Shown: positions 972 through 51,787 of the stretch, one piece after another
Numbering within the stretch: the first letter of the stretch is position 1
Layout of the letters: each line of letters opens with the position of its first letter
Source of the DNA: Saccostrea cucullata
Taxonomy: Eukaryota
NCBI RefSeq assembly: GCF_032062105.1
Contig: NW_026929709.1
Span: 248,001-312,000, forward strand
Length of the DNA: 64,000 nucleotides
Direction of reading: 5' to 3'
Notes under the pieces: generated by a model
What the model saw: the letters and a program-made list of their open reading frames with translations, nothing else
What the model was told of the DNA's origin: nothing
The model's database searches: none
Position numbers and translations under genes: made by a program

Positions 972-3900
972 TCACATTGCACTATTCACAGGAGATGTAA
1001 TATCGTTCTCTGTAGGATTGTTTGAAGTTTCTCCTGAGCCATCTGTATGCCTCTTCTTTTTCTTCTTTTTCTTCTTCTTTTTCTTGTTGTCTGATTCACA
1101 CTTTTTCTCATTTTTCTTTTTTCTTTTCTTTTTCTTTACCTTATATTCATCTTCTGCCGAAATTGGAGCAAGATGACTTCTTGGCGGTTTTGCTAAAGAC
1201 TGATCATTCTGAAGACTTGTTGACTTTTCATTAATCTCAAAAACTCTTTGAGAAGAATGAAGATGGCTCCATGACTGTGTTTTTGATACGTAATCATTCT
1301 GAGGACTTGATGAGCTTTCATTATTTATTTCAACTGTAGATTTGTCTGGTCTTGCCTGTGATACTTTTCTTTCCTATAAATAAGATAATCTCTCAGCAAG
1401 TTCCTGAACACTTCATTAAAGAAGGGAATAATTTTAGATTATCTTCTTGGTGCTAAATCTTTTATAACTTCAGGATTAATCTTACCCCTCCCCCATTCCC
1501 CCGTATACGAGTATTTTTAAAAATTAAAATACAGAGTTAAAAATGTCTTCTCATCGTCTTTATCTAACATTTATGCCCTGTTTCATATGATTTAAATTAT
1601 AGTGATGAAGCATCATTACATCCCAAATCTAGGAAGTATTTTGGTATCTTTCATTTTTGGATCTTGACCTTAAATGGGGCAATAGCGTTGTTATAAAAAT
1701 ATAATCAATATGTATCATAGTGTATTGAAAAACTTGCCTATTCTTGTGCTATTTTCAGTAGATTCAAACGAATTTACATCACGTAAACGTAAAATGATTC
1801 AGACTTGCAAAATATTTAAGTAATCAGAATTCTGAGCAGATATACATACAGGAGCGTTGGAGCAAGGCTTTCTTTTTTTGATCACAACCAGAGCAACAAC
1901 TGCAACCACTAAAGCCACCAGTCCAACAGAAAGCCCAACAATGAGACCGACATCTTCTGTTTCTTCCTGTGGCTTGTTATCTTCAGGATCTAGGTCTGTG
2001 TTGTTTGTAGCTGGAGTTGTCCCAGTTGTTGTCTCTGTGACCACTGTTGTCGTGGTGTCTTCCTCTGTTGTGACTATTACTGTGGTGGGGATACAGGCTG
2101 GATTCTCCTCCGTAGGGGGACAATTCAGGGAAAGTGTATCGCTAGAGTTCACTGTCAAAACATAAGATTGTCAAACTGTAATTCACAAGGGCCGTTCAAA
2201 AAAACCCCGCGCAGTCTGCTATCATTTACTCTAGCAGACGCCATAAAAGTTATAGTAAAATTATAGTTATGAAACTCAATATATTTTAAAGGTTCCAATA
2301 AAGTTTGGGCAACATTTTTGGATACTCAAAAATTTCTCCAAAGATTATCGCTATTTTGATATCGCTGATGGAAAGGTACGGAGCAGGACAAAAAATTGAA
2401 ACAAAAAGATGCGTAATCCAAAATTTTACGCATTTATTTTTCTATAATTTGAGATATTTTTCACAATTTTTTTCAAATATATATTTATTATCTTATCTTT
2501 TTTCATGAATTTAGATTTCTGACATATTATTTGAAGTACTAAAAGAAATATGGTGATTTTTTTCTGCGATGCGATTCTTGTGAAAACAACTGCAAAAATG
2601 ACGATTCCTTAATTGACTGAGCACCACATTTTTGTCAAATTATGTGTAATGCTGGAGAAATCGCCAACAAAGATCCAAAATATGCGCGATAAAACATGTA
2701 GTAAACCAGTGTATTTCCGACATTTGTCTACAAAATTTGTCAAGAAAAGAAATAACAAACTGGAATTTCAGACGGTTAGTCCCTATGCGGGAGGGGACGG
2801 GCAGTTCATCGACAAAAACTTTACATGGACTGTATCCCATTAATACCGGCAGTTTTCGGGTTTAAAACAAAGAAATATGCTATACTTGGTTTCAGCTTGA
2901 CAAGAAATTGTATATGGATGTTTATGTTGAGTAGAAAAGGTACAGGTAACTACAGTGTACATGTTATTTGTACAGAATCGAACACTAGAGGAAACGTTGA
3001 GAAAATAAAATATTACAATTTTTTAAAGATTTAACTGCATCGAGACTTAATTTTATTTCCTGTTAAATCCCTCAAAATTGGTATCAATACGTATATAATA
3101 TGCATATAATTAAAGATGCTTTATATAATGTGCGACATTTTGCCCGATTAACGAGGCTAGGGGGTGGCAGCCATTTTTAGACTATTTCAATCTCCTTTAA
3201 AAGGAGAGCTCCATATAAAGATATACAAAATGATAAAATTTTAAAACTAAAATATATGAATTTTTTCTTTGCCAAATGATAGTTGACAGCTAAATATACC
3301 ATATCTAAAAAAATAAGTTAAATCTGGTGGTTAAATTAAGATTAAATTTTTGACCCGCCAGCCTCCTTAAGTCAAATATTTTTTTCTGTGCAACAAGTCC
3401 GCGTAATTTTTGAAAGGCTCTCGTAAATGTCAAAATAGCCATACATGATGGAATGGTTAATTTACTTTTTAAGAAAAAAGAACGCTGCATCATCGTTACT
3501 AAAAACTAGGTTTTGAAAATGTTTACTGTTTAGATTGTATGACGACTGATTGTTTACAGTTCAACAGATTAGAATTAGTCAGAGTTTGTTACCAGCAGTT
3601 GGCTGTATCCAAAGGAACCCTCCGTCAAAGTTGTAAGAATTGGTAAATTTTACAATAATATGGTTAGAAAGACTTGTGTAAAAGTTTGTATTTTGTGTAA
3701 AATCCGTATTGTGACTGCAGTCAAAATTATTTATCTCTGCATTCTCCGTATCATTAATTGATATTCTCTGTAAACAATGGCTCCCATTAGAAAACAATCT
3801 CAGATCTTTAGCAGTAATCCTTATTTGTCCATCACATTCTGATGTTTCAATGGAACACTCAAGACTTGTTACGGCTGCAGGTATCCCTGGGGAAGATTCG

Positions 3901-6900
3901 TAATCTTGCAACACAACATGAACATCAGTAAGACCCGTCTTAGAAACAGATTCCGAACTTGACAGAGTAAGGAACTGTTCATCTGAAATATAAACGGCTA
4001 TTTTTAACAGTAGTAAATGCATAAGACTTAGTATATAATTTGTGGATCCTTCTCCTCGATTAAGTTTCTTAAAACATAAAATCTTACTACAAAAAAATAT
4101 AGACGTCGCGCACGGTGTTGGTGTCAGTTTCAGTAACGTCAAAATGACGTTATTTTACGTGAAGTTCTAGAAAATTTATTTGACGTGACTTATTTGCTAA
4201 CATTTTTTATGGAGGAAAAATAAAAACCCAGTAATGCGGCCAATTATATAATGCAGGTAATTGAAAACACGTGTCATTAAATTCTCTGCACCCTTTTGCA
4301 TGCATATTGCGGGAGGAAAATATGAGCATGGTTTGCCTCATTTGAAAAAAAAACTTGTTAGAAATAACGAAACTTGTTCAACATCGCATTTTAAATTTTC
4401 ATGATTCTTATTTTATTGAGATAAATTTAAAAAAATTCCATATCAGTAGGGCCCTAGAGCCTGTCCTTTGTTTTCAGTAAATTGTACGATTGAAGATATT
4501 TTGCTGATTTAGCATTGAAATATTTATTTTTGTTCAAAGTCCCATCCCATCTTGTAATGAAAATCTGATACATTTGTACTCACCTGCGACAACCCCTAAC
4601 CCTTATTCAATATTGGACTGGCTATTCAATGTAAACGCGCCATGTACAGAACATTTTATACCAGCACAAAATGGAGTTGACACGCTTTACTGTGAGTTAA
4701 TTCAAATTTAAAAATCATATTCTTGCATAAATTTTGGTTTGTATTTTTTTTTTCTCGTGTCTTAATTCGAACTCTGAATGGTACTTTTGTACAGATTCTG
4801 ACAAGAATTTATAAATACCGATACAGTGTACAAGTATACACTGCACATGTTTTACTTTCATATATAAATGCAACTTTTAAAACTTTAAAATATTTTTCTA
4901 ATTAATCATTATTGGTATGTTTTTCTTTTATCCATATCAGACTTATCAGCAATTAAGAGTAAGTTTTTGGAGAGAGAAAAAAATATTTTGACGCTTTACA
5001 TGACGTTTATGCATTGAACCTAATAAAACGCCAAATTTTTACGTCTGTGACATTTATGTTGACATTTAAATTTTGTTAGGATTTTGTCACCATTCTACTG
5101 AAATTATTTTGGAATATACCAAAAACCTTTTGAAAAGATGCACAATTCATAAAAATCCTTTAATTTTCAATATGTCGATTTTCAATGACCACACATATGA
5201 TCAATTTTACCACATTTATACAATTATAGTAATATTTATTACTTTTGGACAATGTGTGACATTTATGTTGACATTGTAAAAAGTCTATAAAACAAACACT
5301 TCTTCATAGTATCAATTCATTTTCATATCTAGATAAATTTTTGATTTTGCACATTTTGTATTAAACGTTGTTTGGTGCCAAATTATAAAAATGAATTTTT
5401 AAAATGTAGATCATTTCTGGGGTGTAGCATTTAAACGCAACGTTTCTGTCGTCAAATTCACTTGTGACGTATAGCTACATGTAGTACATATATGTAATAC
5501 GGCAATTGTTATTAAAATTTAAGGCACCGCTAGTTAAAATTCTGTCTATAGATCTTTTCCTTAATAACATGGCAACATTTTGTAGAATTTAAAATAATTT
5601 CTAACATCAAATTTTCATCCAGCATTACAAAATTTGCCATTTTACGAATCTTAAAAACTTTGCGACATTGAACCTCCAAACTTTGTGACACACCATTTTA
5701 GTCAATGTCCCCACAATAAATCGGCTTAATATGAGAAACCTAACATACATATCGACACAAAATATCAGTTTAATTTAAAATATAGTTCCTAGCACACAAA
5801 AAGGATAATTGACATGCCATTTCAAAATTGATTTTGCTCATGAAATTATTTTTTTTTAAGTTACCGATGACATTTCTTGTTCCTTCAAAATTTCTTCAGA
5901 TAACGCATATCTACATCGCTGTCTTGCATTTTGAACAACGCTTTCACGGCATTCGGATTGAACAAAATCACAATTGTAAAACTTTACATCAGTTACATCA
6001 TATTTTGAACTTTTCTGCTAAATTTTATGTTTGTATTGTTTGTTTTATGGAAATTATCAACATTTAGTTATTGCGTGTGCGACGCTCCTGTTTCCTGTCT
6101 ACATGCGTTTTTGACGTAATTGATTGAATAGTCGAATTAATATATTTGATAATTGAAATTTTTTTATCAATATTTTTGTTAAAATATATTTAGTATACAA
6201 TTACCGACCGAATGATATATAGTTTTCATATACTGAATTGTTTTAAAATTATGGAAATAGCGCATATGCCGCCGTAATAGTAATCATTGACTTTTTGACA
6301 CCAACACCGTGCGCGACGTCATACTATATTTTTAATTTGAACGACAGTTTTGTCTGAATTTCTGAGGTTACATCGATAAACTTTGATATTTCAATAAAAG
6401 TCGGAAGTACCAGTATGCAATATTTAAAGATCGAATGTGAATGAAAATAGAGTTTGCTTGTCTTAATAAACTGGCCAAATTACACATGAGAGATAAATAA
6501 AACATGAAAACTAGCCTGTCCTATACTGGCCTTGTGACACGTCAAGGCATACTTTAAATCAACTTTTATTCGCGACGACTTTATTTCGAAATTTACCGGG
6601 CATAAACTAGTTCGCTACAATTAATTTTCGTGATGGTCTTTTATGATCTGTTGTTAAATAGAAAGAGAAACTTTAAGGATCGGTTCGCGGCGAGAAATGT
6701 TCACGATGATGAGGCTCTCTCGCGAACTTCGCAAACTTAATTGCAAGCAAATAAAAGATGGGTTACAGTATATATCAAACATGAAAATTAGCCTGTCCTT
6801 CTTTGCCCTTATGACATGTTAAGGCATATACTGAATATGAAAACTAACTTTTCCTTTATTGGCCTTGTGACATGTCAAGGCACATATAAAACATGAAAAC

Positions 6901-7888
6901 TAGCTCCCCTGCCCTCTCTCTCTCTTCAAAACATACATTTCATACATTTTTAAAATATATGTACTCCTACATAGATAAATATGATCTTGACATACCTTTA
7001 TAACACTGGTACTTGAGCTCTAGTACAGTAGTGGTGGAATGATACAGAGTCTGATTACAAAAAACAACTGGACCGGTAGTGGTAGCCTGAACTATAGAGT
7101 GACTTATACACATTTCCCGACCCATACAGTTCTTATGATATACGTAGGTAATCGAATCATTCAGGGTGTTCCGATAAAAGTTAAGACAAGCACTGTCGGT
7201 GTGGTTACAACACATGGACTCCAGCGTAGAGTTAGTACCTTTGACTATGTAATTAGGACAACCCGTTGCCTTAGCAAGAGCCCCAACTTTGACGTGTATT
7301 GGGAACATTTTGTGGTTTGGGGGGCATGATTCGTCCATCACCCACCCTGCTCCATAACATCTGAATGCATAGAGATCAGCTTGTCCTGTTCAAATATAAA
7401 ACCAAATTTCTATCTTAGGCTGTCATACAGGTTATCTCAAATAAAAAGTTTTCTAGCGTATCCTCTATCGGGAAAGATGAAATAATAGGCAATCGAGATT
7501 ATGAGTAATTGTGTCATTCTGCAAAGGATTTCATGAATAATCATCGAAATCTGTATTTTACTTAATTAAATAGCTCTAAAATTTGAATTTTACTAAATTT
7601 CCTTTGCTAGAAGTGATATTTTTGGAGATTTCATATGGCAATCACGTGAACTTACCCCTTAATATCACGAAAAGCAAAATTACACGTGTCTAATTACTGG
7701 TACTTAAGACTATTCCATTATACAAGAGAAGAGCAACAACTTGATAGTAAACTTCACTAAATAATAAATAAATTATAGTTTTGAAAGTATCTTATGTATG
7801 AGAAGTATTTGTAGATATTACATTATGAATACGTACCATAAATGAAATATATGCATTGTAGGATAAATAGAAATCCCGTAAACTGCAT
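972..7888 (-). CDS. Gene A: type I membrane protein (signal peptide, SUEL/Gal-lectin-like domain, CUB-like domain, Thr-rich stalk, TM, Lys-rich tail), about 511 aa, 5 exons
   Basis: Exons 7888-7837 (MQFTGFLFILQCIYFIYG), 7385-6996 (CYGAGW...MCC...CMGREMC...YQCYK), 3982-3593 (LECSIE...DLRL...DGGFLWIQP), 2151-1850 (Thr-rich stalk, TM VGLIVGLSVGLVALVVAVVALVVI, KKRK) and 1373-972 (poly-K, stop TGA). All introns are GT-AG with phases 1,1,1,0, giving 1536 nt of open frame. Confidence 0.85.
2613..2843 (+). pseudogene. Remnant of a mariner transposase N-terminal HTH
   Basis: EHHIFVKLCVMLEKSPTKI resembles the mariner EQRxxIKFxxxxGKSxTE motif, and also EQRAVIKFIVEIGKSPT at about 14300. Confidence 0.5.
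3148..3370. mobile_element. About 220-bp TTAA-flanked MITE (Kolobok/piggyBac-type target), copy 1
   Basis: TTAA-CGAGGCTAG...CCAGCCTCC-TTAA; the interior closely matches 50591-50819. Confidence 0.75.
4102..6320. mobile_element. About 2.2-kb non-autonomous DNA transposon in intron 2 of gene A
   Basis: Perfect 25-bp inverted repeats GACGTCGCGCACGGTGTTGGTGTCA at 4102-4126 and 6296-6320; no transposase ORF inside. Confidence 0.75.
6500..6905. repeat. About 55-60-bp tandem repeat interrupted by a TA-flanked MITE (about 6550-6770)
   Basis: Variants of AAACATGAAAACTAGCCTGTCC...GGCCTTGTGACATGTCAAGGCA at about 6500, 6778, 6836 and 6889; the insert has imperfect TIRs TACTTTAAATCAACTTTTATT / AATAAAAGATGGGTTACAGTA. 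Confidence 0.6.
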
Positions 7889-9716
7889 GTTACGATTCGT
7901 TCGTTTTCGTTTCCAACTACCACATGTTAGCTTCGCACGTTGTTAAGGTCACGTAAGGAATTTAAATCTCACATTGTAGACATTCACAGCAAATAATAGA
8001 TCAATTATACCAGCAGGTTTGCTTATAATTCATCGAACAACTGCATATACACGACCATACAACTCAGACTGCATAAAACATGAACAAGAGAGAGAGAAAG
8101 AGAAAGAAAGACAGAGATTTTTTCTCAGGACACCCCCCTCCCCCAGAATTTTAATTTGGCTTTTTCTGCATTGAAATTGTAGGGAAAATTATATGATTTT
8201 AAAAAATATAATAATTGTTTTTCTTGTAAAATTATATCTAGTAAACGATTTTGAAAATAAAGAATACGATTAAACATGCTGAGAGAGCTTTTTGTAATGA
8301 AACAGCCAGGAACAATTTTTTCAAGACATTTATCTGATAGAATGTCAAGGAAGTGTATTCCTTATACAAAAAAGCAATTCAAATGATCGTTTGTAGTCAA
8401 TTTAAACCTCCGTCGTAAACATTGTCAAGTATGCGTAACCCTATTGCATTCCACTCGGGCTATCAATAACGACCTTATTAGGGACAATGTGAAGGTTTAT
8501 ATATTTTATTTGAGTATTTTTGTGGGTACACTGTACCTTCTTTTGTATGCTGGAAATTTGAGGACACGTTAAATTGCAAACAAATGCCGTAAAAATTATC
8601 AGATTATCTGCAAGAAATCTTTATAAAGGACGCAGACAATTTGAAATTGTAAATACTTTATTTATTTGAATTAACATTCAAAATGTAATTTTTTTTATCA
8701 GAACATTCTTTAAATGTACGTCCTTCTTCAATCTTTCCATTTTATGATGAAAAGAAATCTTAACCTTTACAGCCCCTTCAAATACTCAGTTAATAGCTGA
8801 TGGAATAAAATACATATGTTATAAACACTATTTCTTATCTCAAAAAAAAAACTCTTTAAAATTCAATATGACGAGTAATGCTCTTCTAGAATATAAAACA
8901 TTTGAGATGCTTAATGCAAATACTTTTTGTCATTCTTCTTTCAATTTATCATAAATATTAGCACTATTTTAATACCATTCAGAAAATTGACTGTTCTTGA
9001 GTGGCACATTAAAAAAAAAGATGATTGTAATCCATATTTAATAATATTGATTTAAATATTGTTTAAATCAATATTGAATAAAACAGATCAATTTATTATA
9101 ATAAAATGGCAGTGTTTAATTAAGGCAGAAAAGTTCAGTAAACACTAAAACGAGAATTATCTGTGCCTTCGATTTCAATTTCCTTAACCAGGTTGGTATC
9201 AAAATTGATTGGTATGTGTTTAAACAGCAGCGTCTCGAAGAGATTAATTTATGTGTCATTATTGAAACAGATATAATATAAATTATGAAAATTTCAAAAT
9301 GACAAAAAAGAGAAGGTACTGATTATACAAGAACGATACCGTGTCTTCAGACATGATGGGTGTAACATTTTCTTGTTTGACACAAGGTTGGAGTAATATT
9401 TAAAAACACGAGTATAGACTGAACATTCGTACATACTCTTTTTTATTCCGTAAGTAGGAAAAGCATTTGCGTTGTCAGTATTTGTTTATACTAATGATGA
9501 AAAATTAACCTGCCACACAATTAAATGTATATACCTGAACTTATTTCTCATACAGAGAATAGATTAGAGATGTTTGGCAAATGAAAATATTATCATGTTT
9601 TAATAAGTTCTATAGGATATATCTTATATTATAAATAACGTTTTCAGTGGAAAATTGGGTGTTGGGATATTTATTACATTAAGACTTTTAAAGATAAAAG
9701 AATTTTTTTTACTGAC

Positions 9717-11526
9717 CATTGTGGTATTTTTCTTCGGTTTGATTACAAAACATGTTCAACTTTATCCTGGCATTTGATGAATCTAAATGATAAAGGTAAT
9801 TTACATTATTGCAGAATTGCAGACTTGTAATCAAATGATAAATCTGCAATCTTAATAAAGTGTAATAAAAACAATTTTAAAAAAATACTACTCACAATTA
9901 TATCCGATCCAAAATCTTCCGGATCCATTGAAGTGGATTAGATGTGACACTGTTAAATTTTCTATACCTTGCCATGGATGACGAATCTCACAAATGTTAC
10001 TACATGTATTATTGTCTTCGATTGACATTCGAGAAACATGACCAGAAAATCGGACATCAATTACAGTCAACTGAAGGAGGGGTACGGAATATGTATCAGT
10101 GGAAATTTGGCACCAAATATTCCGAGAAGGCTGAAACTTTTGAAGGAAGTTCTCACTCTGAAGATAAACTCTTTTGAATCCTTGTAAAACAGTGAGATTT
10201 TCAACTTGTGGAATGAAAATTATGTCTTCTATAATAAATTAAAAAAAACCAAATCAAAGGCATTTATATCACAGATATGAAATTACATTTTGCTATTGTG
10301 TTTAAGGATATTTGGTATATTCAACGTATTGAAAAATTGTATATGAACCACAGGCCTTTAGGTCGCTTAGAAATAAAATTGAGGTGTTAAAAAAATAAAG
10401 GTATTGAATTCTTTTCATAGGGTACCTACTTTCGCCAATAAAATTCTTTTCAATTAAACGCTTTACAAATTTACTTTCTATCCATATCTATTCATATATA
10501 AACATGCAATCTTCATTACTACCAAAGTTCATTCCGTAATTCCTTATACTTCTCGAGATATTCTGAAATCAATTCCAAAATTGACCTTAATCATTTTACT
10601 CGACATCAGCTTGGGGCTTTGAAGAGCTACAGTTATTGCTAAGCGGGATCGACGGGACAAATATTCCCCGGAATGAATTTGTTCTAGTTTTATCCATGTA
10701 CATAGGTATCTTACTCAGTAGTTTTTTAGCATGTCAGATTATTTTGGGAAGTTGACTCTCTCACGGTTTGGTCAGTCTAGGGTCTTTTAAATTTTATTTG
10801 TTTTACTTGCTTGTCGTATATATTGAGTGGAGGCCCCCTAACTTTTAATGGTAAATAGAAAATAATCATTCACAGTATTCAAGGCTCTCTTTCTTTCTCC
10901 ATCACCCCTTCTTCTTTGATTAATCTTTTTTTTTGAATGCCTTATCTCTTTCAGAAATAAAATTTTATAACTGGTAATAATACCTTACGTTTTATACAAT
11001 AATATTCAATCCTGACGGTATCATATAACGTCGAGTTCTGTATTGATAAATTATGTTGACATATTCCTATGTTTCCATTGCAATGTTGCATAAAGAGAAG
11101 ATCATGCTGATACGAAATCGACAAAGCATAACCATCGCCGTGGTTTCCCTGGAGACAACTCTGGCCGTACGTTCTGTTAGACAAGACTTTTACAGAGGAA
11201 ACTGCTATGGTGTCATTATGTGGCTCGGTACAATTTAGAACAACTGTTTGTGTGGTTGGCCCATTATTGAAACAAACCATTTTCATATAAGGTATTTCTG
11301 GTAGTTGGTTTTGTAACATCAGATCAACTACAAGTAATCATAAAGAAATAAGAAATTTTATAGAAGCAAGCATAGTAGAACAGTCTTTGTTCAACCAAAA
11401 AACGAGTACACACGAGTTTACTATAATACCTGGACATGTATATTGACAAACATATATTCTAATCATTTTCAATAAATTGTTTCACTCACCAAGTGAATAT
11501 ATTAATATGATGTACCGGATATCCAT
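9717..11526 (-). CDS. Gene B: paralogue with signal, lectin-like, CUB-like and short linker exons; 3' end (TM/tail) not found
   Basis: Exons 11526-11490 (MDIRYIILIYSLG), 11327-10989 (LPEIPY...IAVSSV...HCNG...YYCIK), 10228-9896 (VYLQSENF...WCQI...VIDV...GRFWIGYN) and 9782-9717 (SSNARIKLNMFC...). GT-AG introns, all phase 1. Confidence 0.72.
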
Positions 11527-12576: not shown

Positions 12577-12618
<42 letters not shown>

Positions 12619-15447: not shown

Positions 15448-15466
15448 TATATTACGTATATATGTA

Positions 15467-16890: not shown

Positions 16891-18893
16891 CTATTCGTCT
16901 CTTACAGAGACTGAATATTTAGGAAGACCATTATTCTTCGGGAATGAAGACACGGAAGGGGGCGCACTCTTCTCCGATGGCATCACGGAGAAAATACTTG
17001 GATACAGACCTTTGCCCTCTGGTTCTAAGTCTTGGTCTGTTTCTATCTGCAAAAAAAGAATTTGTGGAAATAATATTGTTCTCACCACTAATTATAGATT
17101 AGACAATATAACTTAAATTAGTCTGGCAACTAAAACTACCTTTTGTTTACTTCTGTGCCTTTTATACAGATACAAAACAGTAAGAAAACAGACCAATATT
17201 CCTCCAAGTACAGCAACCCACCATGGAACTGCGAAGAACAGATTTCACATATTTATCAAAAGATAGTAATTCATATAAAACTTTGTTGCACGTACATTGC
17301 CACTTATATGCTAATGCTTGTACATACAATTATATCAAACTGGCAATATAAGCGTAACAAAGCGCTTGAAATATAAAAGAGGAAGGACTAGCAATCAACT
17401 TCATTGACTTTTCAAAATCAGCTTTTGTCTTGTGAAAGAAAATTTACTTTTTAAACATAGTGGACGTGGCATTAACAAAAATAACCTTGAGTCGACTTTT
17501 GAACCTTCGGACTGGAGGTGGTAGAATTAATCTTGTTTTTATTGCAATCTGCATTCAATGTTCCACAATTCATCGACATTCTGCGGTTTTCAGCTAGGAC
17601 CATTTAAAAGATTAATGAGAAAAATAATGAAAATTTGAGTTTAAAATTCATATTTTTGTGCTTTAATAGCTAAATTATCAACTTACATTTAAATGCGATC
17701 CAAAACACTCCATACCCTTTGAAGTGAACATAAAAATGGTTTGTCAAATTAGCGACCTCCTCAAGCCTGTAAAAATTGGTGTATTTTCCAGGAAATGTAT
17801 ATACATTTGCACAAGATGACTTGTCATAAATAGAGAGTAAATCAGAAACTCCAAGTTGGACATCTATAACAATTAGTCTAACGTAAACACTGTCCGCAAT
17901 CACTTCACACCATACGTCCTCAAAATGCCTGTTTGGGGAGTGGTAATTAAATGACTGAAGATAAACGACGGCAAAATTACTGGCATTATATCTTCTCTGG
18001 CGTAGATTTACTATATTCATTTCTGAAACAAGATTATATAATAGGTTTTTGTTAGCTTTAAGAAAATGTTTCATGCAGAATTTTAAACTATATAATTTCA
18101 TAAAGTAAAATTGATCTGTCCAATGATCTAACAATCATTAAAATGTTAATCTTCAAAAATCTAAAGTGAATAGCCACCTCTGACTACAAAGTTTTAAACG
18201 AGAGACTGTAATTTATACATGTTATATAGAACGGAAACCAATTAGAAGGTGTTCATGTATAAACTCACGCAAAAATCACGAATTTATCACGCAAACCAAT
18301 CGATTGATCACATCATTAAATCGAAAAATAAGACAGTTATTCCTTAAATAAATAATTTAGCATACACTGACGATTCAGTAGGTATGTGTTCCAACAAGCA
18401 CTGCATGAATGAACAAATTTCAATACTTACAGTAATGTCTAACGCATGTTACATTTATACTTTATAAAAAGTTTTACATGTTTGCATTATGAGAGTTACT
18501 TACGCTTGATGCAGTAATACTGAATTTCTGCGAAGTCGACTTCATTTGCAAGGTTAGCTGACGAGCAGTCTTGTGATGTGGACATCCGCTTTATATTATG
18601 AGCGCAAAATTTTAATTGTCCCGTGCACTTTTTCTGCAAGTCGAAAGTCGTCCCTGGATACTTTGTGTTAGGATATGTGACTATACAGTCTCCAATATCA
18701 TTACTCACACAGCACGACCTCTGACCACTGCAGCCGCTACTTGCTTTCTTTGTTATTGTCGTAATAGAGGAAATTGCTATGACATCTTTTTCAAGCTTGA
18801 GGTTACTACAGTTCGGGTAAATAATAGGTTCTGAAGATAAGTAACATATTGTTCTGTTATACAGAGCTTCTGGGAGAGACAAATCAGCCAAAA
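16891..18893 (-). CDS. Gene C: paralogue (lectin-like, CUB-like, short stalk, TM, truncated tail); first exon not located
   Basis: Exons 18893-18504 (LPEALY...IAISSI...SCC...DC...KCTG...YYCIK), 18022-17687 (VYLQSFNY...WCEV...VIDV...GVFWIAFK), 17593-17486 (weak GTTATT donor), 17228-17140 (TM VPWWVAVLGGILVCFLTVLYLY, KRHR) and 17046-16891 (stop TAG). Phases are consistent. Confidence 0.75.
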
Positions 18894-19081
18894 CTGAAAA
18901 ACAATGCAGAAAATGCAAGTTTACTTTACCTACAACATAAAAAATAATATGCCTATTTGAATAAAAATTCCTCTTAAATAAAGATATTACATGTATCTGA
19001 AATTGTACCATTTGGCTTAATATTATATATAGTCTATTTATATTCCCTATATAATCTATAAAAACGCAAACAGTTTAGAAC

Positions 19082-20661
19082 ACTAGAAACGATCTCGTTG
19101 CGAGCAACGAGGTCTTCCGTCCGATTCTGAAATAAAAAACGAAAAATCCAGCCAAAAAAGTTATAAAAAATACGCACACACGGGGGATCGAACCCGGGTC
19201 GACCGCGTGAAAATCAAACGCGCTTTTTGTTATTCCGAACGCGCCATCCATTACGCTATCGAGGCCACTGCTCTAAATGCACTTGTATATACTTGTATAT
19301 ACAGAAAATGTCATAGCATTATGAAAGGCGGGCCACTATTCATAATTTTGCGCCAATCGCCACGAGTAAATTTTCGCGCCTTTCCTTTGGAATGTCTTAT
19401 TAAATAGATGTGCTAGCTTCAATGAAATGACAAAAGACCGTTCTTATCTCCTAAATTTCGAGGTGTAGAAAGTATATTTAACACATCACATATCATGTAA
19501 AGGCAAGTAACACTAAAGCTTTGAAACGGCTATGAATGGTTCACTTTCTTAAATTTCCTGTTTATCACGAAAATGGACTATTCCGAATACCTACACTTTC
19601 ATAAAAAATTTTGAAATGTTTCACCGAAAAAATGACTCGCCCTACGACGGTCAAGGAACAAGATACCATCTATATTCAATAACTTGGAATGAGAAAAAAA
19701 TATTTATATAAAGTCAATTAAATGATCTTTTAAAAATAGTTATCTTATCTTTTAAAAAAAATTCTTTTTGTTGTCTTTTCTTCAGTTTAATATGACACAA
19801 GTGTGCACGGGAAAACAGTGGTCACATCTTATACTTACTATATATATTGTTTCTTGAAAAACCATTGCTTATAACCATGATTAAAGATCTGTTTTTCCTT
19901 GGTGTAAAACAAAACAAAAAACCAGCCAAAACCAATTAAAGAAGGCGTTTAAGAAGACCATGGATTAAAACTTTAGTTTGACAAGAATTGCAACGTAACT
20001 ACGACGTGACAATCCAAGTACTCATTCACATTTCATTGATCCTTATGTTACTTTCGTTCAACCAAACGCTTGGCTGCCTCCGTAAACCCTATTCGCTAAA
20101 TGGCGGAGTCTACGGAGACATCCGCCATTTTGGACCCGCTTCAGATATTCAAATTTTAATATCTCGAGTTTGGATTTATCAATTTAAAACCAAATTATAT
20201 ATTTAGCCTATTTAAAAGGGTGTCTATTAACCTTCCTAAAATAATTCAAAAAATATTGAAAAACAAAAAAGTAACAAAATTCGACTTTTTTAATTCTCAT
20301 CTGGTAACGACCGGAAATAGAAAGACGAACAAAAGATCGCGTCCTGGATAGTACTTATCACGATCTATAATCCCTGAAAGTTTCACAGTGATATCTTTTG
20401 CCGTTCTTGAGATTAACCATGGACAAAATGTCATTTTAAAATCAGAAAATTGTCCGTAACTTGGCACCAGATAGGAATTTCCAAAAAATCTCTCAGATAA
20501 AATAACTTCAGATAATAACACATTTTTCCTGCAAATTTCATGAAAATTTGTCCAGTAGTCTTTGAGAAATCGCGTGCACAAAATTAGATGTACGGAGAAA
20601 TGATAATAAGAAGAAACAGTAGAATCACTATAAGGTCTTCCGTGAAGACGGAAGACCTTAA
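19082..20661. mobile_element. Helentron-type non-autonomous element (HINE-like)
   Basis: One end has the palindrome CTCGTTGCGAGCAACGAG plus GTCTTCCG; the other has the hairpin AAGGTCTTCCGT-GAAG-ACGGAAGACCTT, which carries the same sub-terminal motif. Confidence 0.65.
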
Positions 20662-21231
20662 CTACTTATTCACCGTATTTGGGCCGTATTCACCGGAGAG
20701 TCGGTGCGCCTGCAGCGGCATTATGACGTCACAATCAACTAGCAAAACTCGAAAAGGAAAACACGGAGGTTACATTTTTTTTATGGCAGAAGTTTGTAAA
20801 TGAAAATGGTGTCGTTATGTAGCATTCAGTGCCTTATTTATTCAAAATTGGACCATGTAATAAAAAATGGACTCTTTTGATGTTGAATATGATTTCACCA
20901 GAAAAAATATCAATATTGACACGTGTCAAAGCCGAGATCAATATCAATATTTCTCTGGCGAATAACAAACCATATTGAACATCAACAGAGTCCATAATTG
21001 TATAATATTTGACGAATTGAAGATTGATTTTACTGTACTTTGACAAAAAGGGGCATGTATTTCTTATTCTTTTGTCCCCCGCTGAAAGTTGGGTTCTTAA
21101 TTTCGGTCTGTCTGTCCGACCGTCTAGCTGTCTGACTGTAACACTTTTGTTTCCACCAGAGAGAAAGACAATGAGAGAGATAGCTGCAGCTCTGTGGCGT
21201 TATGGTTTATATATGTTTATCTTTGACCATA

Positions 21232-21657
21232 ACGCTACAGATCCCGTAATGCAAAAAAAAAAAAATGCAATTTATGGCGCAATATTTTTTGCACACTTTT
21301 GGGGAGAATTTCTCCACTTTCCAGCATCGGTCAATTCACTGTCTTTCATTCCCTAATTCTGGGCATATTATTTAACTATAAATCTGTATATTTTATCAAT
21401 CTCCAAACCCTTTCCAATCGTCTCTACAAGTGACTCGCTTTATTAGAATTATTTGTCAAGCGAGTTTATTGCCCGTAGAGAGACAACTATAAATGGCTGG
21501 TAGGTGAATAAACTACACATATTGGCTACAAAATGTGTCTAAATTTAGGTAGTAAAAGGTACTTGATTGACCAGTGCTAGAAAGTAGAGAAATTCTTCCA
21601 AAAAGTGCGCAAAAATATTGCGCCGGAAATTGCACCTTTTGCAGGATCTGCAGCTAA
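21232..21657. mobile_element. MITE with about 100-bp imperfect TIRs
   Basis: GCTACAGATCC...GGCGCAATATTTTTTGCACACTTTT...CGGTCAAT mirrors ATTGACCAG...AAAAGTGCGCAAAAATATTGCGCC...GGATCTGCAGC. Confidence 0.6.
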
Positions 21658-22192
21658 GAGAGACAGACAGACAGACAGATAGACAGACAAACAGATGGTG
21701 TTTGTATATAAACCGTAGAATGAAGTCTTACCTACTGAAAAAGAGAGAAAATAAACCAAAGCCTCCATGTTTTAAGGAAGTATATTAAGCAGTTTCTTCA
21801 TTTTAAAACTCTTAATTTAATCTGAGAACGGAATATTAAGCTGATAATGGACCATTTATCAACCATTCTTTTTTACTTACAGAAGAATTTGATAACGATT
21901 TGAAATGAAGTGAAGTCCTAGATAAGACTTATTTTGTTATTAGACCCATTAGTGTAGTTCAATCAAGTCGTTGATTGTTTAAAATACACCTATGTTAAGC
22001 AGACGCTTTTATACCTTTCTTTGTATTTCATTTGTATTAATTCTGTTATTTTTTTTAAAAATCTATCAGTAATTCATCTACATGTACATGCATAATGGAA
22101 ATTCAAATTCATGCTTTTGTTATGTTTCTTTTCTTCTTAGCTCAAAAGGAAATATCAAATCAACGTAGGAATGTAAAGAATATTGTAAATTG

Positions 22193-32100: not shown

Positions 32101-33484
32101 AAAAAACGCATTTTGAATTTTTTAAAAGTGCATTAAAACTGATACAAAACCAACGCACTTAGAATTTGTTCATAGTACGTTAAATATGGGACAAAATCTA
32201 ATGCATTGATCTACCATCATCGAGAAAAAGACAAGTAGAAGACTCCTCGGGCAACCTCTTTATCTTTCCTGCCAACATGTATGTATTTACGAAATTAGAG
32301 TATATAAATAAAGTAGATGAAGAAATTGAGGTATATTTTCCTGAAGAAAAAAAAAGCATTGGGTTATATTAATGAAGAGTGGATGAGGCACCATATCACT
32401 GATCTAAGCAACAGTCCCCAAAGTAACTGTATTTTGGCCAAAGTAGCTTAGAATACTAAATAGAATACACAATAATAGTATAAAATGTATTGATAATTAT
32501 TTTTCCTCTTTACACTTACCAAATAACTTTTTCAAAGAGCTATCATGTTGTGCGGAAATAAACAATTTTATTTAGGCCTCTCAAATAACGATAAAAAGAT
32601 CCTCCTATTATATATACAGGAAAATTATTTTTATTGTGCGTACAAACTTGGACCCCATTTTGTCGCATTTCTCGTACATGTATCCTTCAGGTCATATTTG
32701 AAAAAAAGTACAAAAAAACTTAATAGGTAAAAAAGGTAGTCCTTGGTGAATTGAATTTTAATATTTAGTTCTTTTAAAATTGAAAGTCCATGTTCATTGT
32801 CATCATACTTACAAAAGGCATTGGAGCCCGGGGATGGTAAAGGAGTCGGTTAAGCCCCCTACCCCACTTTTTTGCAAAAGATATACATAATATACGCATT
32901 TGCAAGAATATTGACCAAACCGTGCATATTTTTCAGAAGTGCATTAATATGGTCGTACTATATAAAAATGCGTTTACTTTCTTCTAAATTTAAGGAACTT
33001 TTAAAAAATTCGAAATGCGTAATTTTTTTAAATTGCTTTATATCAGTTAGATAATAACGTACTTTGAAAATAAATTCTTTTTCTCAAAATGCGTGAACTT
33101 GGTCCCACATATAATGCGATTTGAAGATTTTTTTCAAAGTGCGTTTTTTAGCTAGTGACTTGATTTAATGCACATGTGGATGATACACGACTTTTGGGGA
33201 CTTTTTTTTACTTTAAAAATAGTAGTTTTTTATTTAAGGTAGACATTGTAATTATGACAATATGTTGTTTCGAATATTTTGTTGCAAAAGTGCAAAACAT
33301 AAAAACACATCAAACGTATACAATAGAGAATGCACAATATAAAGCCAATGGCATCTTACATGTACTAAGTCATCTCAAACAGTAAAGGATTCCGTAATTT
33401 TGCAAGATCATAATTAAATCTGATAAAGTTGTTAAATTTTTACATACCTGCAAACCAGTAAATAATTACAAGTAATCCCAACAT
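23126..33484 (-). CDS. Gene D: paralogue with a long mucin-like repeat stalk, about 717 aa, 6 exons
   Basis: Exons 33484-33448 (MLGLLVIIYWFAG), 30294-29863 (LPEPKFY...CYG...IAVSSV...RCC...DC...VCNGYQKC...DYFCIK), 29380-29021 (VYLQSAGYP...WCQI...IDIKL...RFWIGFV), 28396-27446 (S/T-rich 16-aa repeats), 25064-24976 (TM LWWIALIIGFPALIMIGGIVY, KYKKRQRK) and 23410-23126 (poly-K, stop). GT-AG introns, phases 1,1,1,1,0, 2154 nt in total. Confidence 0.85.
23810..24851. mobile_element. Tc1/mariner-type MITE in the last intron of gene D
   Basis: Perfect 33-bp TIRs CAGGGTGTTTCACAATATATGTCACACATCTAA, with TA on both sides. Confidence 0.88.
25787..26087 (+). mobile_element. tRNA-headed SINE, apparently full length
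   Basis: A-box TGGCGCAGTGG, B-box GGTTCGAGTCC, body GGTCCTTCGGATGA...GAGGTCCCG and an (AAAC)n tail. Related copies at about 27015-27150, 55070-55320 and 60310-60360, and a reverse copy at about 44110-44405. Confidence 0.75.
27930..28145 (-). repeat. 48-bp coding tandem repeat (RSSTESTTTANKDHNP), about 4.5 near-identical copies within a longer degenerate array
   Basis: GAAGATCTCGGGTTGTGATCTTTGTTAGCTGTTGTAGTACTCTCTGTG is repeated inside exon 4 of gene D. Confidence 0.92.
31600..31985. repeat. Degenerate Helentron/HINE-like fragment in intron 1 of gene D
   Basis: Ends with GAGAAGATGTTGAAAA...AGTTTACAGACAGACAGATGGAC...CTCACTTGAG, a microsatellite-plus-terminus layout typical of such elements. 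Confidence 0.45.
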
Positions 33485-47358: not shown

Positions 47359-47389
47359 TTAATTGAAAGTAAATAAATAATAAAATTAA

Positions 47390-49211: not shown

Positions 49212-51787
49212 ATGATTTTCAAGATTACGTTGCTGAAGGTATATGTTTGGATGGTATGTGTACTTCAGTGTTTGTGTAGTGGTAAGTGATATTTATAATT
49301 TATAATTAGTTTACAGTGTAAAATTCAATGAAATAAACATTTGATATACGTCTTTGTTTTTTCCTAACGTATATAGTGACAGATAGAAAGCTCGAGGCCT
49401 GCTATGGCGACGGTTGGAGATTACAGCCCGTGTGTGGCTTTGAAGAAGTCGTTTATCCGTACCAAGTACTACTTGGTGCCAAAGATCCAAACATTTGTCC
49501 CGCAGTTCTGCATAAAAACCAGACAAATTCTACCCTGACCGACCAGTGTTGTCAGATTGATCAGTCAAACACGTGTGGGGGGTTATTAAATGTATCTAAT
49601 TATAGAACGTACAGAGACTATTTTGAGAACTGTATAGGAAGAGTCCAGTGTACATACCTACCAATAGAGCGAACACGGAGCTCAACTTTTTCCAGTACCT
49701 GTGATCCACAGTTCCATGAAAACACAACACTAGTTACAATGATTTATCAGTGTGTTAAAGGTAAGGAACGTCAAATAAAACAATTAGATATCAAAGTTAA
49801 CATTTTGTGTATGTACATGTACGAAGGTCCTAGTCGATAAAGTAAAGAGATAATAGGGGAATTCTTATTACAGATGTAAAAAATATATTTAACACGGAAA
49901 TCATCACAAATCGTACAGATATTCATTTGAAAGGACAGGAATATGGAAACCCGATACTGCAAAGAAACTCAGATTGCGACAGTGTTGATGACGTCATTCA
50001 GTGTTCAGTAGAAGCCCTGAGTTGTGATGACGTGATTGATGTACAGGCGTGGGACTACAGGCTAGAGTGTGGACAGGAGTTGTGGTTCTGTGATTCAAAT
50101 GAGACTGTTAAACTGACGTGTGACAATAACACAGGGATACAGAAAACGGACGTGTATCACAGCTTGTCTAATTACGTCACTGTAACGTTCAAAAACAGTC
50201 TGTCACGTGATGGAGGATATTTCTGGCTCACGTTCAATCCAGGTACAGTTTGTTTTTACATTAATATGTGGAATTTTTAAGATGCAGACAGATCTAGATA
50301 CAATTGACTAAGTTCATCCTACCAACAGATTATGCGTCGACTTTGTGTAAACTTTTGGCTTACTTTTTCAGTTCCCGTAAATTCCACCTTAACAGTCAGC
50401 TGTCCCGTGCGGAAGTCAACCTGTCCCGGATCTTCCGGTTGTCAAGCAGTTCGGAGTCGGTCCTGTCGACCCAGTGACAATGATGATGACAAAACTTTAC
50501 GTACGTTAATTATTGTTGTATAACAGAAGAACACTACAATCAACAAGTGAATTCTTAAATTAAACAGCAGAGACTTTTGTATTAATTATATCAAGGGGAC
50601 TGGGTGGTTGTGCACGTGGCCATTTCCAGACTATTTTGATATCCTTTATAAGAAGAGCTCCATATAAAGATATAACAAAATGATCAAATTTTAAAACTAA
50701 AATTTATGAAATTTTTCTTTGCCAAATGATAGTTGACAGCTTAAGATATCATATCCCAAAATCTAAGTTATATCTGGTGGTTAATAAGAAAATAATTTGA
50801 CGACCCCTAGCCTCCTTAAACTTCATCTGCGAAACATATTTTAGTTCAATTTCCAAGGAATTTTTTTTTTTTTTTATGTTTACGATTTCCTTCTTCCGTG
50901 AAATCTGTAAAAGATGAGTAATGATTATGGAACATATAAATCACTTCTTTTTTAACTCAATTGATCTATGTTTATTTTTATAAAGTACCCCTCCATATTG
51001 ATCTCCCTGGTTCTCTTTCAGTTATAATCGCTGGTGTTGTTGGGTGTGTAATCCTATTGATATTGATTATTCTAATCGTTATAAAGTGGAAACATCGACA
51101 GAAAAAGATTGACCCGGATGTAATTAAGTATTTAATCAAATAAGTAATGATCTCAAAACAAACTCTTATAGAATCATACATATATTAATATTATTTATTG
51201 TACATATAAATTGTTAAATTTCGTATTTTTTGCTGCTAAAAGAACTAGCATTTCATTGGTTTTTTTTCATTGTGTTCAAGATTGAGACAACAAAGAAGAA
51301 TCCGTACGTTGGACAAAATGGGAATGAGTTACAGACTGCCTCTCGTGTATATGTTCCTTTATTTCAATTAATACAACTTCCTATGTCATATTTTTGGAAA
51401 GAATGTGAAATTTTACTTTATAATTCTGAAAACTTAAAAATGAAATAAAGAAACCGTTTTCTTAAACTATAATTACAGAAACGACGTCCAAACAACCGGT
51501 TATCTCCCATTCCACCAACTAACCAACGGATAGAGAGAGAGGGAACCGGGAAACCGAAAAAGGGAAAGAAAAGGAAAAAAGACAAGGGGAAGGATGTGCC
51601 ATCAACACCAAGGGAAGTAACTACAACACCAAAGGGACGGAAAGAAAAGAAAAAGAAGAAAGATAGGGAGCTGAACGGGTCGCTTTCAAGAGAGGCATCT
51701 AAAATGTCAGAAGGAAGGAAAAGCAAGAGGAAGAAAAGAAAGAAACACAAAGATGTCTCCAGGGGCAGTGAATCAAATGGAAACTGA
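49212..51787 (+). CDS. Gene E: inverted paralogue most similar to gene A, about 486 aa, probably 7 exons
   Basis: Exons 49212-49281 (signal MIFKITLLKVYVWMVCVLQCLCS), 49377-49760 (CYGDGW...TNSTL...QCC...CIGRVQC...YQCVK), 49874-50242 (QCSVE...DYRL...YHSLSN...DGGYFWL), 50372-50500, 50986 (or 51022)-51119 (TM VIIAGVVGCVILLILIILIVI), 51281-51346 (less certain) and 51479-51787 (K/R-rich, stop TGA). Confidence 0.82.
50591..50819. mobile_element. TTAA-type MITE, copy 2, in intron 4 of gene E
   Basis: Shares GAGCTCCATATAAAGATA...TCTTTGCCAAATGATAGTTGACAGCT...AGCCTCCTTAA with 3148-3370. Confidence 0.75.

What the first reader, a model, noticed from the sequence alone, without database searches (positions are those of the whole stretch)
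972..51787. Five-gene cluster of highly diverged lectin-like/CUB-like/stalk/TM/poly-Lys surface receptors
Seen: the ORF track shows only scattered fragments, but they splice into five genes with one exon plan. That plan is a signal exon, a Cys-rich exon of 339-432 nt ending Y-x-C-x-K, a CUB-like exon of 333-390 nt ending in F/L-W-[IL], a stalk, a TM and a basic tail, with all ectodomain introns in phase 1. The Cys scaffold, exon sizes and phases are kept (exon 1 of B and D both 37 nt; TM exons of C and D both 89 nt) while the residues in between differ strongly. Known: the pattern C...C...I-x-V...C...C-x-G-x2-4-C...Y-x-C resembles SUEL/rhamnose-binding lectin domains (as in latrophilin and EVA-1), and CUB and SUEL domains occur in gamete-recognition and immune proteins. 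Inference: a diversifying family of glycan or cell-recognition receptors (gamete, self/non-self or particle recognition). I cannot place it in any named family.
Basis: partly seen in the sequence, partly recalled or inferred. Interest (0 to 1): 0.8.

Follow-up and report, generated by a model that had tools for sequence, protein, structure and literature searches.

The report
Oyster SUEL-CUB membrane receptor gene cluster
Five neighbouring oyster genes encode membrane proteins of one unnamed, mollusc-wide family, each with a lectin-fold domain that has lost the known sugar-binding residues, a CUB domain, a mucin-like stalk and usually a lysine-rich tail; their function is unknown.

Summary
The window (Saccostrea cucullata, by exact RefSeq protein matches) carries exactly five collinear pairs of paralogous exons. 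An RNA contig and raw reads confirm three gene E junctions to the base. RefSeq models cover genes A and D.

Exon 2 encodes a divergent SUEL/rhamnose-binding-lectin fold: pLDDT 94.6, all top PDB matches are RBL domains, and hhalign against true SUEL repeats gives 95%, E 3e-8. Exon 3 encodes a CUB fold (top 21 matches all CUB, Z 8.8-11.6). Pfam detects neither domain.

The family spans all major bivalve lineages and a gastropod (214 clusters). All named members sampled are "uncharacterized" or misnamed "mucin-like".

Two inferences fail:
- Canonical glycan binding is unlikely. The Glu and Lys needed for sugar binding are absent in 80 of 80 members.
- "Diversifying" is not supported. dN/dS against the S. 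echinata orthologue is 0.23 (SUEL-like) and 0.13 (CUB), and the paralogues are old.

Gene B looks degenerate: 6 of 10 cysteines and a doubtful TM. The N gap is intergenic. Most likely these are adhesion or co-receptor proteins, but function is untested.

The parts
972..7888 (-). Gene A. CDS exons: 7888-7837 (signal, 52 nt, candidate), 7385-6996 (SUEL-like, 390), 3982-3593 (CUB, 390), 2151-1850 (Thr-rich stalk plus TM, 302), 1373-972 (Lys-rich tail with stop, 402).
   Evidence: RefSeq XP_062620327 (P0020) maps at 92-100% identity to exons 2-5. Its tail carries long Lys runs. Splice sites read. The signal exon is from my scan only.
9200..11526 (-). Gene B, a divergent and possibly decaying copy. 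Exons: 11526-11490 (37-nt signal candidate), 11327-10989 (SUEL-like, 339, only 6 of the 10 family cysteines), 10228-9896 (CUB, 333), about 9783-9716 (short stalk exon), and a TM-like candidate from about 9322 that contains Glu and His and has no clean donor. No basic tail found.
   Evidence: B has the weakest profile score of the five (E 1.9e-6) and the longest branch in the tree (1.66).
16891..21768 (-). Gene C. Exons: 21768-21732 (37-nt signal candidate), 18893-18504 (SUEL-like, 390), 18022-17687 (CUB, 336), 17593-17486 (stalk, 108), 17228-17140 (TM, 89), 17046-16891 (tail ORF, 51 codons). A Lys-rich stretch at about 16880-16830 lies in another frame.
   Evidence: All junctions fit AG/GT with phase 1 (ectodomain) and phase 0 (after the TM). 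There is no RNA or RefSeq support in hand.
22193..22496 (.). Assembly gap (N). It is intergenic, between the 3' end of D and the candidate first exon of C.
   Evidence: No family exon lies within 425 nt on the C side or 630 nt on the D side. Continuity was not testable and the gap was not filled.
23126..33484 (-). Gene D. Exons: 33484-33448 (signal, 37), 30294-29863 (SUEL-like, 432), 29380-29021 (CUB, 360), 28396-27446 (Ser/Thr-rich stalk with four 16-residue tandem repeats, 951), 25064-24976 (TM, 89), 23410-23126 (tail with a run of ten Lys, plus stop).
   Evidence: RefSeq XP_062620329 (P0009) maps to exons 1-4. That model reads 10 codons past a consensus AAAG|GTAAGA donor to a stop. The TM and tail exons have matching phases but no RNA evidence.
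49212..51787 (+). Gene E. Exons: 49212-49281 (signal, 70), 49377-49760 (SUEL-like, 384), 49874-50242 (CUB, 369), 50372-50500 (Cys-containing stalk, 129), 51022-51119 (TM, 98), 51479-51787 (Lys/Arg-rich tail plus stop, 309).
   Evidence: Junctions 1-2, 2-3 and 3-4 are confirmed by a 1023-nt RNA contig, and junctions 2-3 and 3-4 also by raw reads. The TM and tail exons, their donor and their acceptor are conserved in the S. echinata orthologue locus L026. No read crosses the TM-tail junction.
50578..50831 (.). Repeat inside intron 4 of gene E. It is not part of the gene product.
   Evidence: Depth is tens to hundreds of times that of the exons, and most reads run on into unrelated sequence. This explains the 0.10 word share of many runs.

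Best explanation
This is a tandem cluster of genes of an unnamed, ancient molluscan family of type I membrane glycoproteins.

Shown:
- Each protein has a signal peptide, then a divergent SUEL/RBL-fold domain with the eight canonical cysteines plus one extra pair, then directly a CUB domain.
- A short Cys-containing linker follows, then a Ser/Thr-rich stalk of very variable length, one TM helix and a basic, often poly-Lys, cytoplasmic tail.
- Each ectodomain module is one phase-1 exon.
- At least gene E is transcribed and spliced.
- Both globular domains are under purifying selection.

Inferred:
- The SUEL-CUB head, held above the glycocalyx by the stalk, binds a ligand. Because the residues required for rhamnose/galactose binding are replaced throughout the family, the ligand is more likely a protein (as for latrophilin RBL with teneurin, or EVA-1 with Slit) or a glycan bound in a non-canonical site. 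A family-specific near-invariant Tyr (next to the first Cys) and Lys (in place of the YGR motif) are candidate residues for such a site.
- The proteins would then act as adhesion molecules or co-receptors, as other single-pass CUB proteins do (neuropilin, Kremen, CDCP1).
- The polybasic tail would attach to acidic inner-leaflet lipids or adaptor proteins.

Gene B appears to be decaying.
For: - Paralogy and exon plan.
- Transcription and splicing of E.
- RefSeq models for A, D and the neighbouring gene F.
- SUEL fold: model pLDDT 94.6. Foldseek top 13 hits are all RBL domains. VIA gives Z 6.2-7.1 for five RBL chains, then other RBL-like folds, then a drop to Z 4.0.
- SUEL homology: the only PDB sequence hits are two RBL domains. 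The family profile hits proteins with Pfam SUEL_Lectin repeats. hhalign gives 95.1%, E 3.3e-8.
- CUB: the top 21 of 48,161 chains are all CUB, Z 8.8-11.6, rmsd 2.1-2.9 A over about 100 residues, then Z 7.3 or less. A 49-sequence profile hits only cubilin, neuropilin-2 and Gpr126 CUB.
- Conserved architecture: 51 of 76 long relatives have the two domains adjacent and 57 have a TM, including a Lottia protein.
- Polybasic tails: 25 of 55.
- Purifying selection: dN/dS 0.23 and 0.13.
- Loss of sugar-binding residues: 0 of 80 have Glu at C1+1 and 0 of 80 have the loop-2 Lys, read against the mutagenesis in PMC2430599.
Against: - No binding, localisation or tissue data exist, so the function is by analogy only.
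- RefSeq models end D inside the stalk and the S. echinata orthologue of E just after the TM. Secreted or tail-less isoforms may therefore be the main products, and no read crosses a TM-tail junction.
- Expression of E is low (depth about 1-8), and the spliced contig differs from the window by about 4%. It may come from another lineage of the species complex.
- Loss of the canonical residues does not exclude glycan binding at another site.
- The CUB model has only moderate confidence (pLDDT 73).
- Signal peptides and TM helices were judged by eye and by simple hydropathy.
Confidence: 0.6

Rival explanations
1. These are canonical membrane-bound lectins, acting as pattern-recognition receptors that bind rhamnose- or galactose-containing glycans on microbes or food particles.
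For: - The domain is homologous to SUEL lectins.
- A bivalve SUEL-type lectin is reported to agglutinate bacteria through LPS (cited in PMC8878817).
- Bivalves expand lectin-like immune genes in tandem arrays (PMC6835236, listed).
Against: - Glu at C1+1 and the loop-2 Lys are absent in 80 of 80 members. Even conservative changes at these sites abolished binding in latrophilin RBL.
- The YGR and DPC/KYL motifs of RBL carbohydrate-recognition domains (PMC3269628) are not kept.
- Pfam SUEL_Lectin does not match at E<=1.
Confidence: 0.15
2. This is a rapidly diversifying recognition system (gamete recognition or self/non-self), with paralogues and alleles driven apart by positive selection.
For: - Paralogues share only 15-36% identity on a fixed Cys scaffold.
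- The genes lie in a tandem cluster, with more copies upstream and on other contigs.
- The window and the RNA contig differ by about 4%, with 13 nonsynonymous changes.
- The stalk evolves faster (dN/dS 0.51).
Against: - dN/dS is 0.23 and 0.13 in the two binding domains between Saccostrea species.
- Synonymous changes outnumber nonsynonymous ones, 17 to 13.
- A, E and F each have separate close relatives in other data sets, and the family is shared by all bivalve lineages. The low identity therefore reflects age, not speed.
Confidence: 0.08
3. They are mainly membrane-tethered or secreted mucins that protect or lubricate epithelia. The SUEL-CUB head would be only a structural cap or a cross-linking module.
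For: - D has a 317-residue Ser/Thr-rich stalk with tandem repeats. Relatives have stalks of several hundred residues, and RefSeq names them mucin-like.
- RefSeq models of D and of the S. echinata orthologue of E stop before the tail.
Against: - The stalks of E, C and F are short (about 40-50 residues).
- The head domains, not the stalk, are the conserved and constrained part.
- TM and tail exons are conserved between species.
Confidence: 0.12
4. Much of the cluster is non-functional: decayed copies or gene-prediction artefacts.
For: - B lacks 4 of the 10 cysteines, has a degenerate TM and no tail.
- C's Lys-rich stretch is out of frame.
- A fragment with stop codons lies just upstream of the window.
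- Only E has RNA evidence here.
Against: - All ten domain exons are open with intact AG/GT sites.
- A, D and F have RefSeq models.
- E is spliced and under purifying selection.
Confidence: 0.05

Closest known systems
EVA-1 (C. elegans) / EVA1C: single-pass membrane proteins with SUEL/RBL domains, Slit co-receptor
   Same: Both are type I membrane proteins with an N-terminal RBL-fold domain that lacks the sugar-binding Glu and/or Lys (PMC2430599). EVA-1-like clusters appear among the structural look-alikes of P0007.
   Different: EVA-1 has two SUEL domains, no CUB, no mucin stalk and a FAM176-type C-terminal region. Here there is one SUEL-like domain, directly followed by CUB, and no Pfam match in the tail.
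Latrophilin (ADGRL) / LAT-1 lectin domain
   Same: These are the best structural matches (Foldseek E 8e-4 to 2e-2, VIA Z 6.5-7.1) and the best PDB sequence hit (8suf_E). In latrophilin this domain binds a protein (teneurin).
   Different: Latrophilins are 7TM adhesion GPCRs with olfactomedin, HRM and GAIN domains, and none of these is present here. The oyster domain is about 30 residues longer and has an extra cysteine pair.
Secreted rhamnose-binding lectins (SUEL, CSL3, SUL-I)
   Same: Same fold and the same eight-cysteine scaffold.
   Different: Those are soluble, often tandem carbohydrate-recognition domains with YGR and DPC/KYL motifs and proven sugar binding. Here the motifs and the key Glu and Lys are missing and the protein is membrane-anchored.
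Single-pass CUB receptors and co-receptors (neuropilin, Kremen, CDCP1, DCBLD, Neto)
   Same: All have a CUB fold close to the membrane-distal end of a type I membrane protein. Kremen, neuropilin and Gpr126 CUBs are top structural matches. CDCP1, DCBLD and Kremen clusters appear as feature look-alikes.
   Different: The partner domains differ (Kringle/WSC, FV/VIII, LCCL, LDLa). None of them combines CUB with a SUEL domain and a mucin stalk.
Lophotrochozoan SUEL-repeat proteins (Lingula XP_013419491, chiton XP_064609902, Lottia XP_009045119)
   Same: They share the subtype with the extra 'CC...C' cysteines and S/N-Y-M in place of KYL. The family profile hits them at E 1e-19 to 1e-7. The Lottia protein also has the SUEL-like, CUB-like and TM order.
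   Different: The Lingula and chiton proteins carry several SUEL repeats that still reach Pfam SUEL_Lectin, and no CUB-like domain was detected with my profile.

Membership tests
SUEL / rhamnose-binding lectin domain (Pfam PF02140, RBL-CRD) | RBL alpha/beta fold | tested here: met
   The AlphaFold model of E exon 2 has pLDDT 94.6. Foldseek ranks 1-13 are all RBL domains at probability 0.97-1.00. VIA gives Z 6.2-7.1 over 86-90 residues for five RBL chains, then drops to Z 4.0 after the RBL-like folds.
SUEL / rhamnose-binding lectin domain (Pfam PF02140, RBL-CRD) | Significant sequence-profile similarity to bona fide SUEL domains | tested here: met
   hhalign of the 80-sequence family alignment against 11 Helobdella SUEL repeats gives Prob 95.1, E 3.3e-8 over 96 columns. 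The family profile hits proteins with Pfam SUEL_Lectin at E 1e-19 and 2e-10.
SUEL / rhamnose-binding lectin domain (Pfam PF02140, RBL-CRD) | Match to the Pfam model above its gathering score | tested here: not met
   None of the five exon peptides hits at E<=1. None of the nine full-length family proteins scanned hits at E<=0.01.
SUEL / rhamnose-binding lectin domain (Pfam PF02140, RBL-CRD) | Eight cysteines in the RBL pattern (C1-C3, C2-C8, C4-C7, C5-C6; PMC3269628) | tested here: inconclusive
   Ten cysteines are at least 90% conserved. Eight of them align with the RBL positions and two are extra. Disulfide pairing could not be read. Gene B keeps only six.
SUEL / rhamnose-binding lectin domain (Pfam PF02140, RBL-CRD) | YGR motif and DPC-x-GT-KYL motif | tested here: not met
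   The YGR position reads x-G/Y-A-K (Lys in 75 of 80). The DPC position reads x-x-C-N/D. KYL is replaced by N/T-Y-M (with the motif definitions).
SUEL / rhamnose-binding lectin domain (Pfam PF02140, RBL-CRD) | Glu at +1 of the first Cys and the loop-2 Lys, both required for sugar binding (PMC2430599) | tested here: not met
   At C1+1: Tyr 67, Phe 7, His 3, Glu 0 of 80. At the Lys position: Asn 45, Thr 18, His 9, Lys 0 of 80.
SUEL / rhamnose-binding lectin domain (Pfam PF02140, RBL-CRD) | Binds L-rhamnose or D-galactosides | not testable with these tools
   Needs recombinant protein.
CUB domain (Pfam PF00431) | CUB beta-sandwich fold | tested here: met
   For the model of D exon 3 (pLDDT 73.3), the top 21 of 48,161 chains are all CUB domains, with Z 8.8-11.6 and rmsd 2.1-2.9 A over 92-105 residues. 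The next hit is at Z 7.3. The Foldseek top hit is spermadhesin CUB, at a weak E of 0.02.
CUB domain (Pfam PF00431) | Sequence-profile similarity to CUB domains | tested here: inconclusive
   The 49-sequence profile hits only cubilin (E 0.0035), neuropilin-2 CUB1 (0.0044, 106 of 122 positions) and Gpr126 CUB (0.17) among 177,635 PDB sequences. The Pfam CUB model does not match at E<=1.
CUB domain (Pfam PF00431) | Four conserved cysteines and, in calcium-binding CUBs, the Tyr/Glu/Asp/Asp/Ser site | not tested
   Two cysteines are conserved (one invariant, one at least 90%) and the others vary between subgroups. The calcium site was not mapped.
EVA-1 / EVA1C family | Two tandem SUEL domains plus a FAM176-type C-terminal region | tested here: not met
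   There is one SUEL-like domain per protein, followed by CUB, and no Pfam family in the tails.
Latrophilin / adhesion GPCR | Olfactomedin, HRM, GAIN/GPS and 7TM domains | tested here: not met
   The proteins have a single TM, and no such Pfam domains were found in the family proteins scanned.
Membrane-tethered mucins | Long Ser/Thr-rich tandem-repeat region plus TM, usually with a SEA domain | tested here: inconclusive
   D and many relatives have long Ser/Thr-rich repeats. E, C and F have stalks of only about 40-50 residues. No SEA domain was found.

The most novel reading that the evidence does not exclude
The family could be a mollusc-wide class of surface receptors in which an RBL fold has given up sugar binding and built a new, family-invariant Tyr/Lys pocket for a different ligand. 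In that reading the conserved NLS-like polybasic tail would be released by proteolysis to signal to the nucleus, or alternative 3' ends would switch between secreted decoy and membrane receptor.
Probability: 0.12. Interest if true: 0.65.

Novelty: new variant of a known kind. Interest (0 to 1): 0.45.

Why it matters
SUEL-type domains in lophotrochozoans have almost no known function (PMC8878817 calls their role "elusive"). This work defines a conserved family with 214 sequence clusters across all major bivalve lineages and at least one gastropod. Domain databases miss it and genome annotation mislabels it as mucins, papilin or bacterial adhesins.

It gives annotators two profiles and a clear architecture. 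It shows that the lectin label would mislead, because the sugar-binding residues are gone. It also offers a compact, spliced, expressed gene (E, 2.6 kb) as an entry point for experiments.

It is a useful family definition, not a new principle.

Tried and rejected
- Pfam on the nine exon ORFs found nothing relevant at E<=1.
- A PDB profile search with the small 10-sequence CUB alignment found nothing. The 49-sequence profile was needed.
- The word-index search with the Cys-domain alignment found one short Logan ORF only, because of its length filter. Its contigs gave no context.
- Foldseek on the CUB model was weak, with a best E of 0.02 and mixed jelly-rolls. The exhaustive aligner settled it.
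- My first acceptor for D exon 2 (30249) was wrong. The RefSeq model and the phase rule give 30294.
- The many 'RNA' runs with a 0.10 word share reflect an intronic repeat at 50578-50831, not expression.
- Three literature searches for SUEL plus CUB in oysters or molluscs found no description of the family.
- The careful tree search did not finish in time, so the quick tree is used and only its well-supported groups are quoted.
- A words search of earlier scan notes returned nothing, and 'SUEL' occurs in no note.
- I handed no joined (spliced) model to any search or fold tool. Domains were searched exon by exon by reference, and full-length context came from database proteins (P0007, P0009, P0020, P0028). 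The only joining was inside one script, to sort the RNA differences of gene E into synonymous and nonsynonymous.

Full report
**What is in the window**

The window is AT-rich eukaryotic DNA (33% GC) from contig C11846 of a 1.17-Gb assembly. The organism is Saccostrea cucullata.
- RefSeq proteins XP_062620327 (P0020) and XP_062620329 (P0009) map to the window in blocks of 92-100% identity.
- XP_062620326 (P0007) matches the neighbouring locus L005 over the whole aligned SUEL-like exon.

tblastn of each candidate exon against the window and profile searches of all six-frame ORFs find exactly five Cys-rich exons and five CUB-like exons. They form adjacent collinear pairs: A-D on the minus strand and E on the plus strand. 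Pairwise identities are 15-36%, with E-values from 1e-5 to 1e-13. This is well beyond chance.

**Exon plan**

I read the splice sites directly.
- Cys-rich exons: 390, 339, 390, 432 and 384 nt for A to E.
- CUB-like exons: 390, 333, 336, 360 and 369 nt for A to E.
- All have AG/GT sites and all are phase 1 on both sides.
- All Cys-rich exons end Y-x-C-x-K, and all CUB-like exons end F/L-W-I/L.
- D's first exon is 37 nt. The TM exons of C and D are both 89 nt.

Three details are weaker than stated:
- In A, the stalk and TM share one exon.
- B's TM-like exon contains charged residues and lacks a clean donor, and I found no basic tail for B.
- C's Lys-rich stretch is out of frame with its tail ORF.

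**The assembly gap**

The gap (22193-22496) touches no model exon. It lies between the stop of D (23126) and the candidate first exon of C (21768-21732). The 'ORFs' across it are runs of X. I could not test continuity, so the adjacency of C and D rests on the scaffold.

**Transcription**

One reads call was allowed, and I spent it on the compact gene E.
- A 1023-nt contig from an RNA run aligns as 49207-49281 | 49377-49760 | 49874-50242 | 50372-50473, with GT..AG introns of 95, 113 and 129 nt. These are exactly the predicted junctions.
- Three raw oligo-dT reads in each of two further runs cross junction 2-3, and one read crosses junction 3-4.
- Depth is low (about 1-8).
- No read crosses the TM-tail junction.
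- The contig differs from the window at about 4% of positions. Of the differences listed, 17 are synonymous and 13 nonsynonymous.
- The strong pile at 50578-50831 is an intronic repeat.

**The 3' ends**

RefSeq ends D ten codons past a consensus AAAG|GTAAGA donor inside the stalk ORF. The S. echinata model of the E orthologue (P0028) ends by read-through just after the TM.

Against that, several features point to a real membrane form with a tail:
- D has a TM exon and a tail exon with matching phases.
- In E, the TM donor, the tail acceptor and a 100-125-residue tail ORF are conserved between the two Saccostrea species.
- A's RefSeq model includes a poly-Lys tail.

The membrane form with a basic tail is therefore likely. 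Shorter isoforms may coexist.

**What the domains are**

Pfam sees nothing in the exons or in nine full-length relatives.

For the Cys-rich domain:
- A 13-sequence profile hit only two PDB sequences, both RBL domains.
- An exhaustive profile search found 214 clusters, among them proteins with 4-11 Pfam SUEL_Lectin repeats.
- With an 80-sequence alignment, AlphaFold gave pLDDT 94.6.
- Foldseek ranks 1-13 are all RBL domains: latrophilin, LAT-1, SUL-I and CSL3.
- The exhaustive aligner gives Z 6.2-7.1 for five RBL chains, then other RBL-like folds, then Z 4.0.
- hhalign against eleven canonical SUEL repeats gives 95.1%, E 3.3e-8.

For the second domain:
- The model is moderate (pLDDT 73).
- The top 21 of 48,161 chains are all CUB domains, at Z 8.8-11.6.
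- A 49-sequence profile hits only cubilin, neuropilin-2 and Gpr126 CUBs.

**Not a canonical lectin**

RBL domains are defined by eight cysteines and by the YGR and DPC/KYL motifs (PMC3269628). In mouse latrophilin-1 RBL, the Glu after the first Cys and the loop-2 Lys are both needed. Even E-to-D or K-to-R changes abolish binding (PMC2430599).

In 80 family members the first position is Tyr, Phe or His and never Glu. The second is Asn, Thr or His and never Lys. The family instead has its own near-invariant Tyr and Lys, plus an extra cysteine pair. It shares that pair with SUEL repeats of a brachiopod and a chiton.

**Distribution and age**

Named relatives come from:
- oysters, scallops and mussels;
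- unionids;
- venerid and mactrid clams;
- Solemya;
- the gastropod Lottia.

All are 'uncharacterized' or named after their low-complexity stalks.

Of 76 long relatives, 51 have the two domains adjacent and 57 have a TM. Of 55 tails, 25 have polybasic windows.

In S. cucullata there are at least 13 SUEL-like and 9 CUB-like exons. These include gene F and a decayed copy just upstream of the window.

In a quick tree, A, E and F each pair with their own relatives from other data sets. B and C form a long-branched pair, and D sits with heterodont sequences. The cluster therefore holds old paralogues.

**Selection**

Against the S. echinata orthologue of E, dN/dS is 0.23 (SUEL-like), 0.13 (CUB) and 0.51 (stalk). 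The binding domains are constrained, not diversifying.

**Conclusion**

This is a real, expressed and conserved but unnamed family of SUEL-fold/CUB/mucin-stalk type I membrane proteins. Its most likely role is adhesion or co-receptor function through a protein or non-canonical ligand. That role is an inference from analogy with EVA-1, latrophilin RBL and single-pass CUB receptors.

Literature searches found no description of it.

Noticed in passing
window 34757-39417 (+): A non-LTR retrotransposon lies between genes D and E. It has an ORF1-like protein, then an APE-type endonuclease (Pfam Exo_endo_phos, E 4e-11) and a reverse transcriptase (RVT_1, E 5e-33). These are split over three overlapping ORFs, so there are at least two frame breaks.
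   Followed up: partly
window 50578-50831: A short repeat in intron 4 of gene E has RNA depth tens to hundreds of times that of the exons. Most reads run on into unrelated sequence, so it is an abundant dispersed element transcribed elsewhere.
   Followed up: no
window 54181-54597 and 57413-57721 (+): Two similar ORFs each end in the start of a rhodopsin-type 7TM domain (Pfam 7tm_1, E 7e-6 and 2e-5). Another note of this scan (s1-701081) reads them as alternative first exons of one GPCR. I did not examine this.
   Followed up: no
window 27446-27414 (gene D) and 51119-51145 (gene E): Public gene models stop by reading through a consensus donor: D ten codons after the stalk, and the S. echinata orthologue of E just after the TM. 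These could be secreted or tail-less isoforms, or annotation errors.
   Followed up: partly
G000:C11846:224686-228048 (L005/L022) and 243688-247316 (L014/L023), upstream of the window: The cluster continues beyond the window. There is an intact sixth gene F (RefSeq XP_062620326). There is also a copy whose SUEL-like exon fragment carries two stop codons.
   Followed up: partly
window 27414-28454 (-): D's stalk exon holds four near-identical 16-residue tandem repeats rich in Ser/Thr. Stalk length varies from about 40 to several hundred residues across the family.
   Followed up: no
proteins P0010, P0032, P0064, P0069 (relatives in other bivalves): Several relatives have clusters of two or three cysteines just inside the membrane, next to basic residues. 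These may be palmitoylation sites.
   Followed up: no
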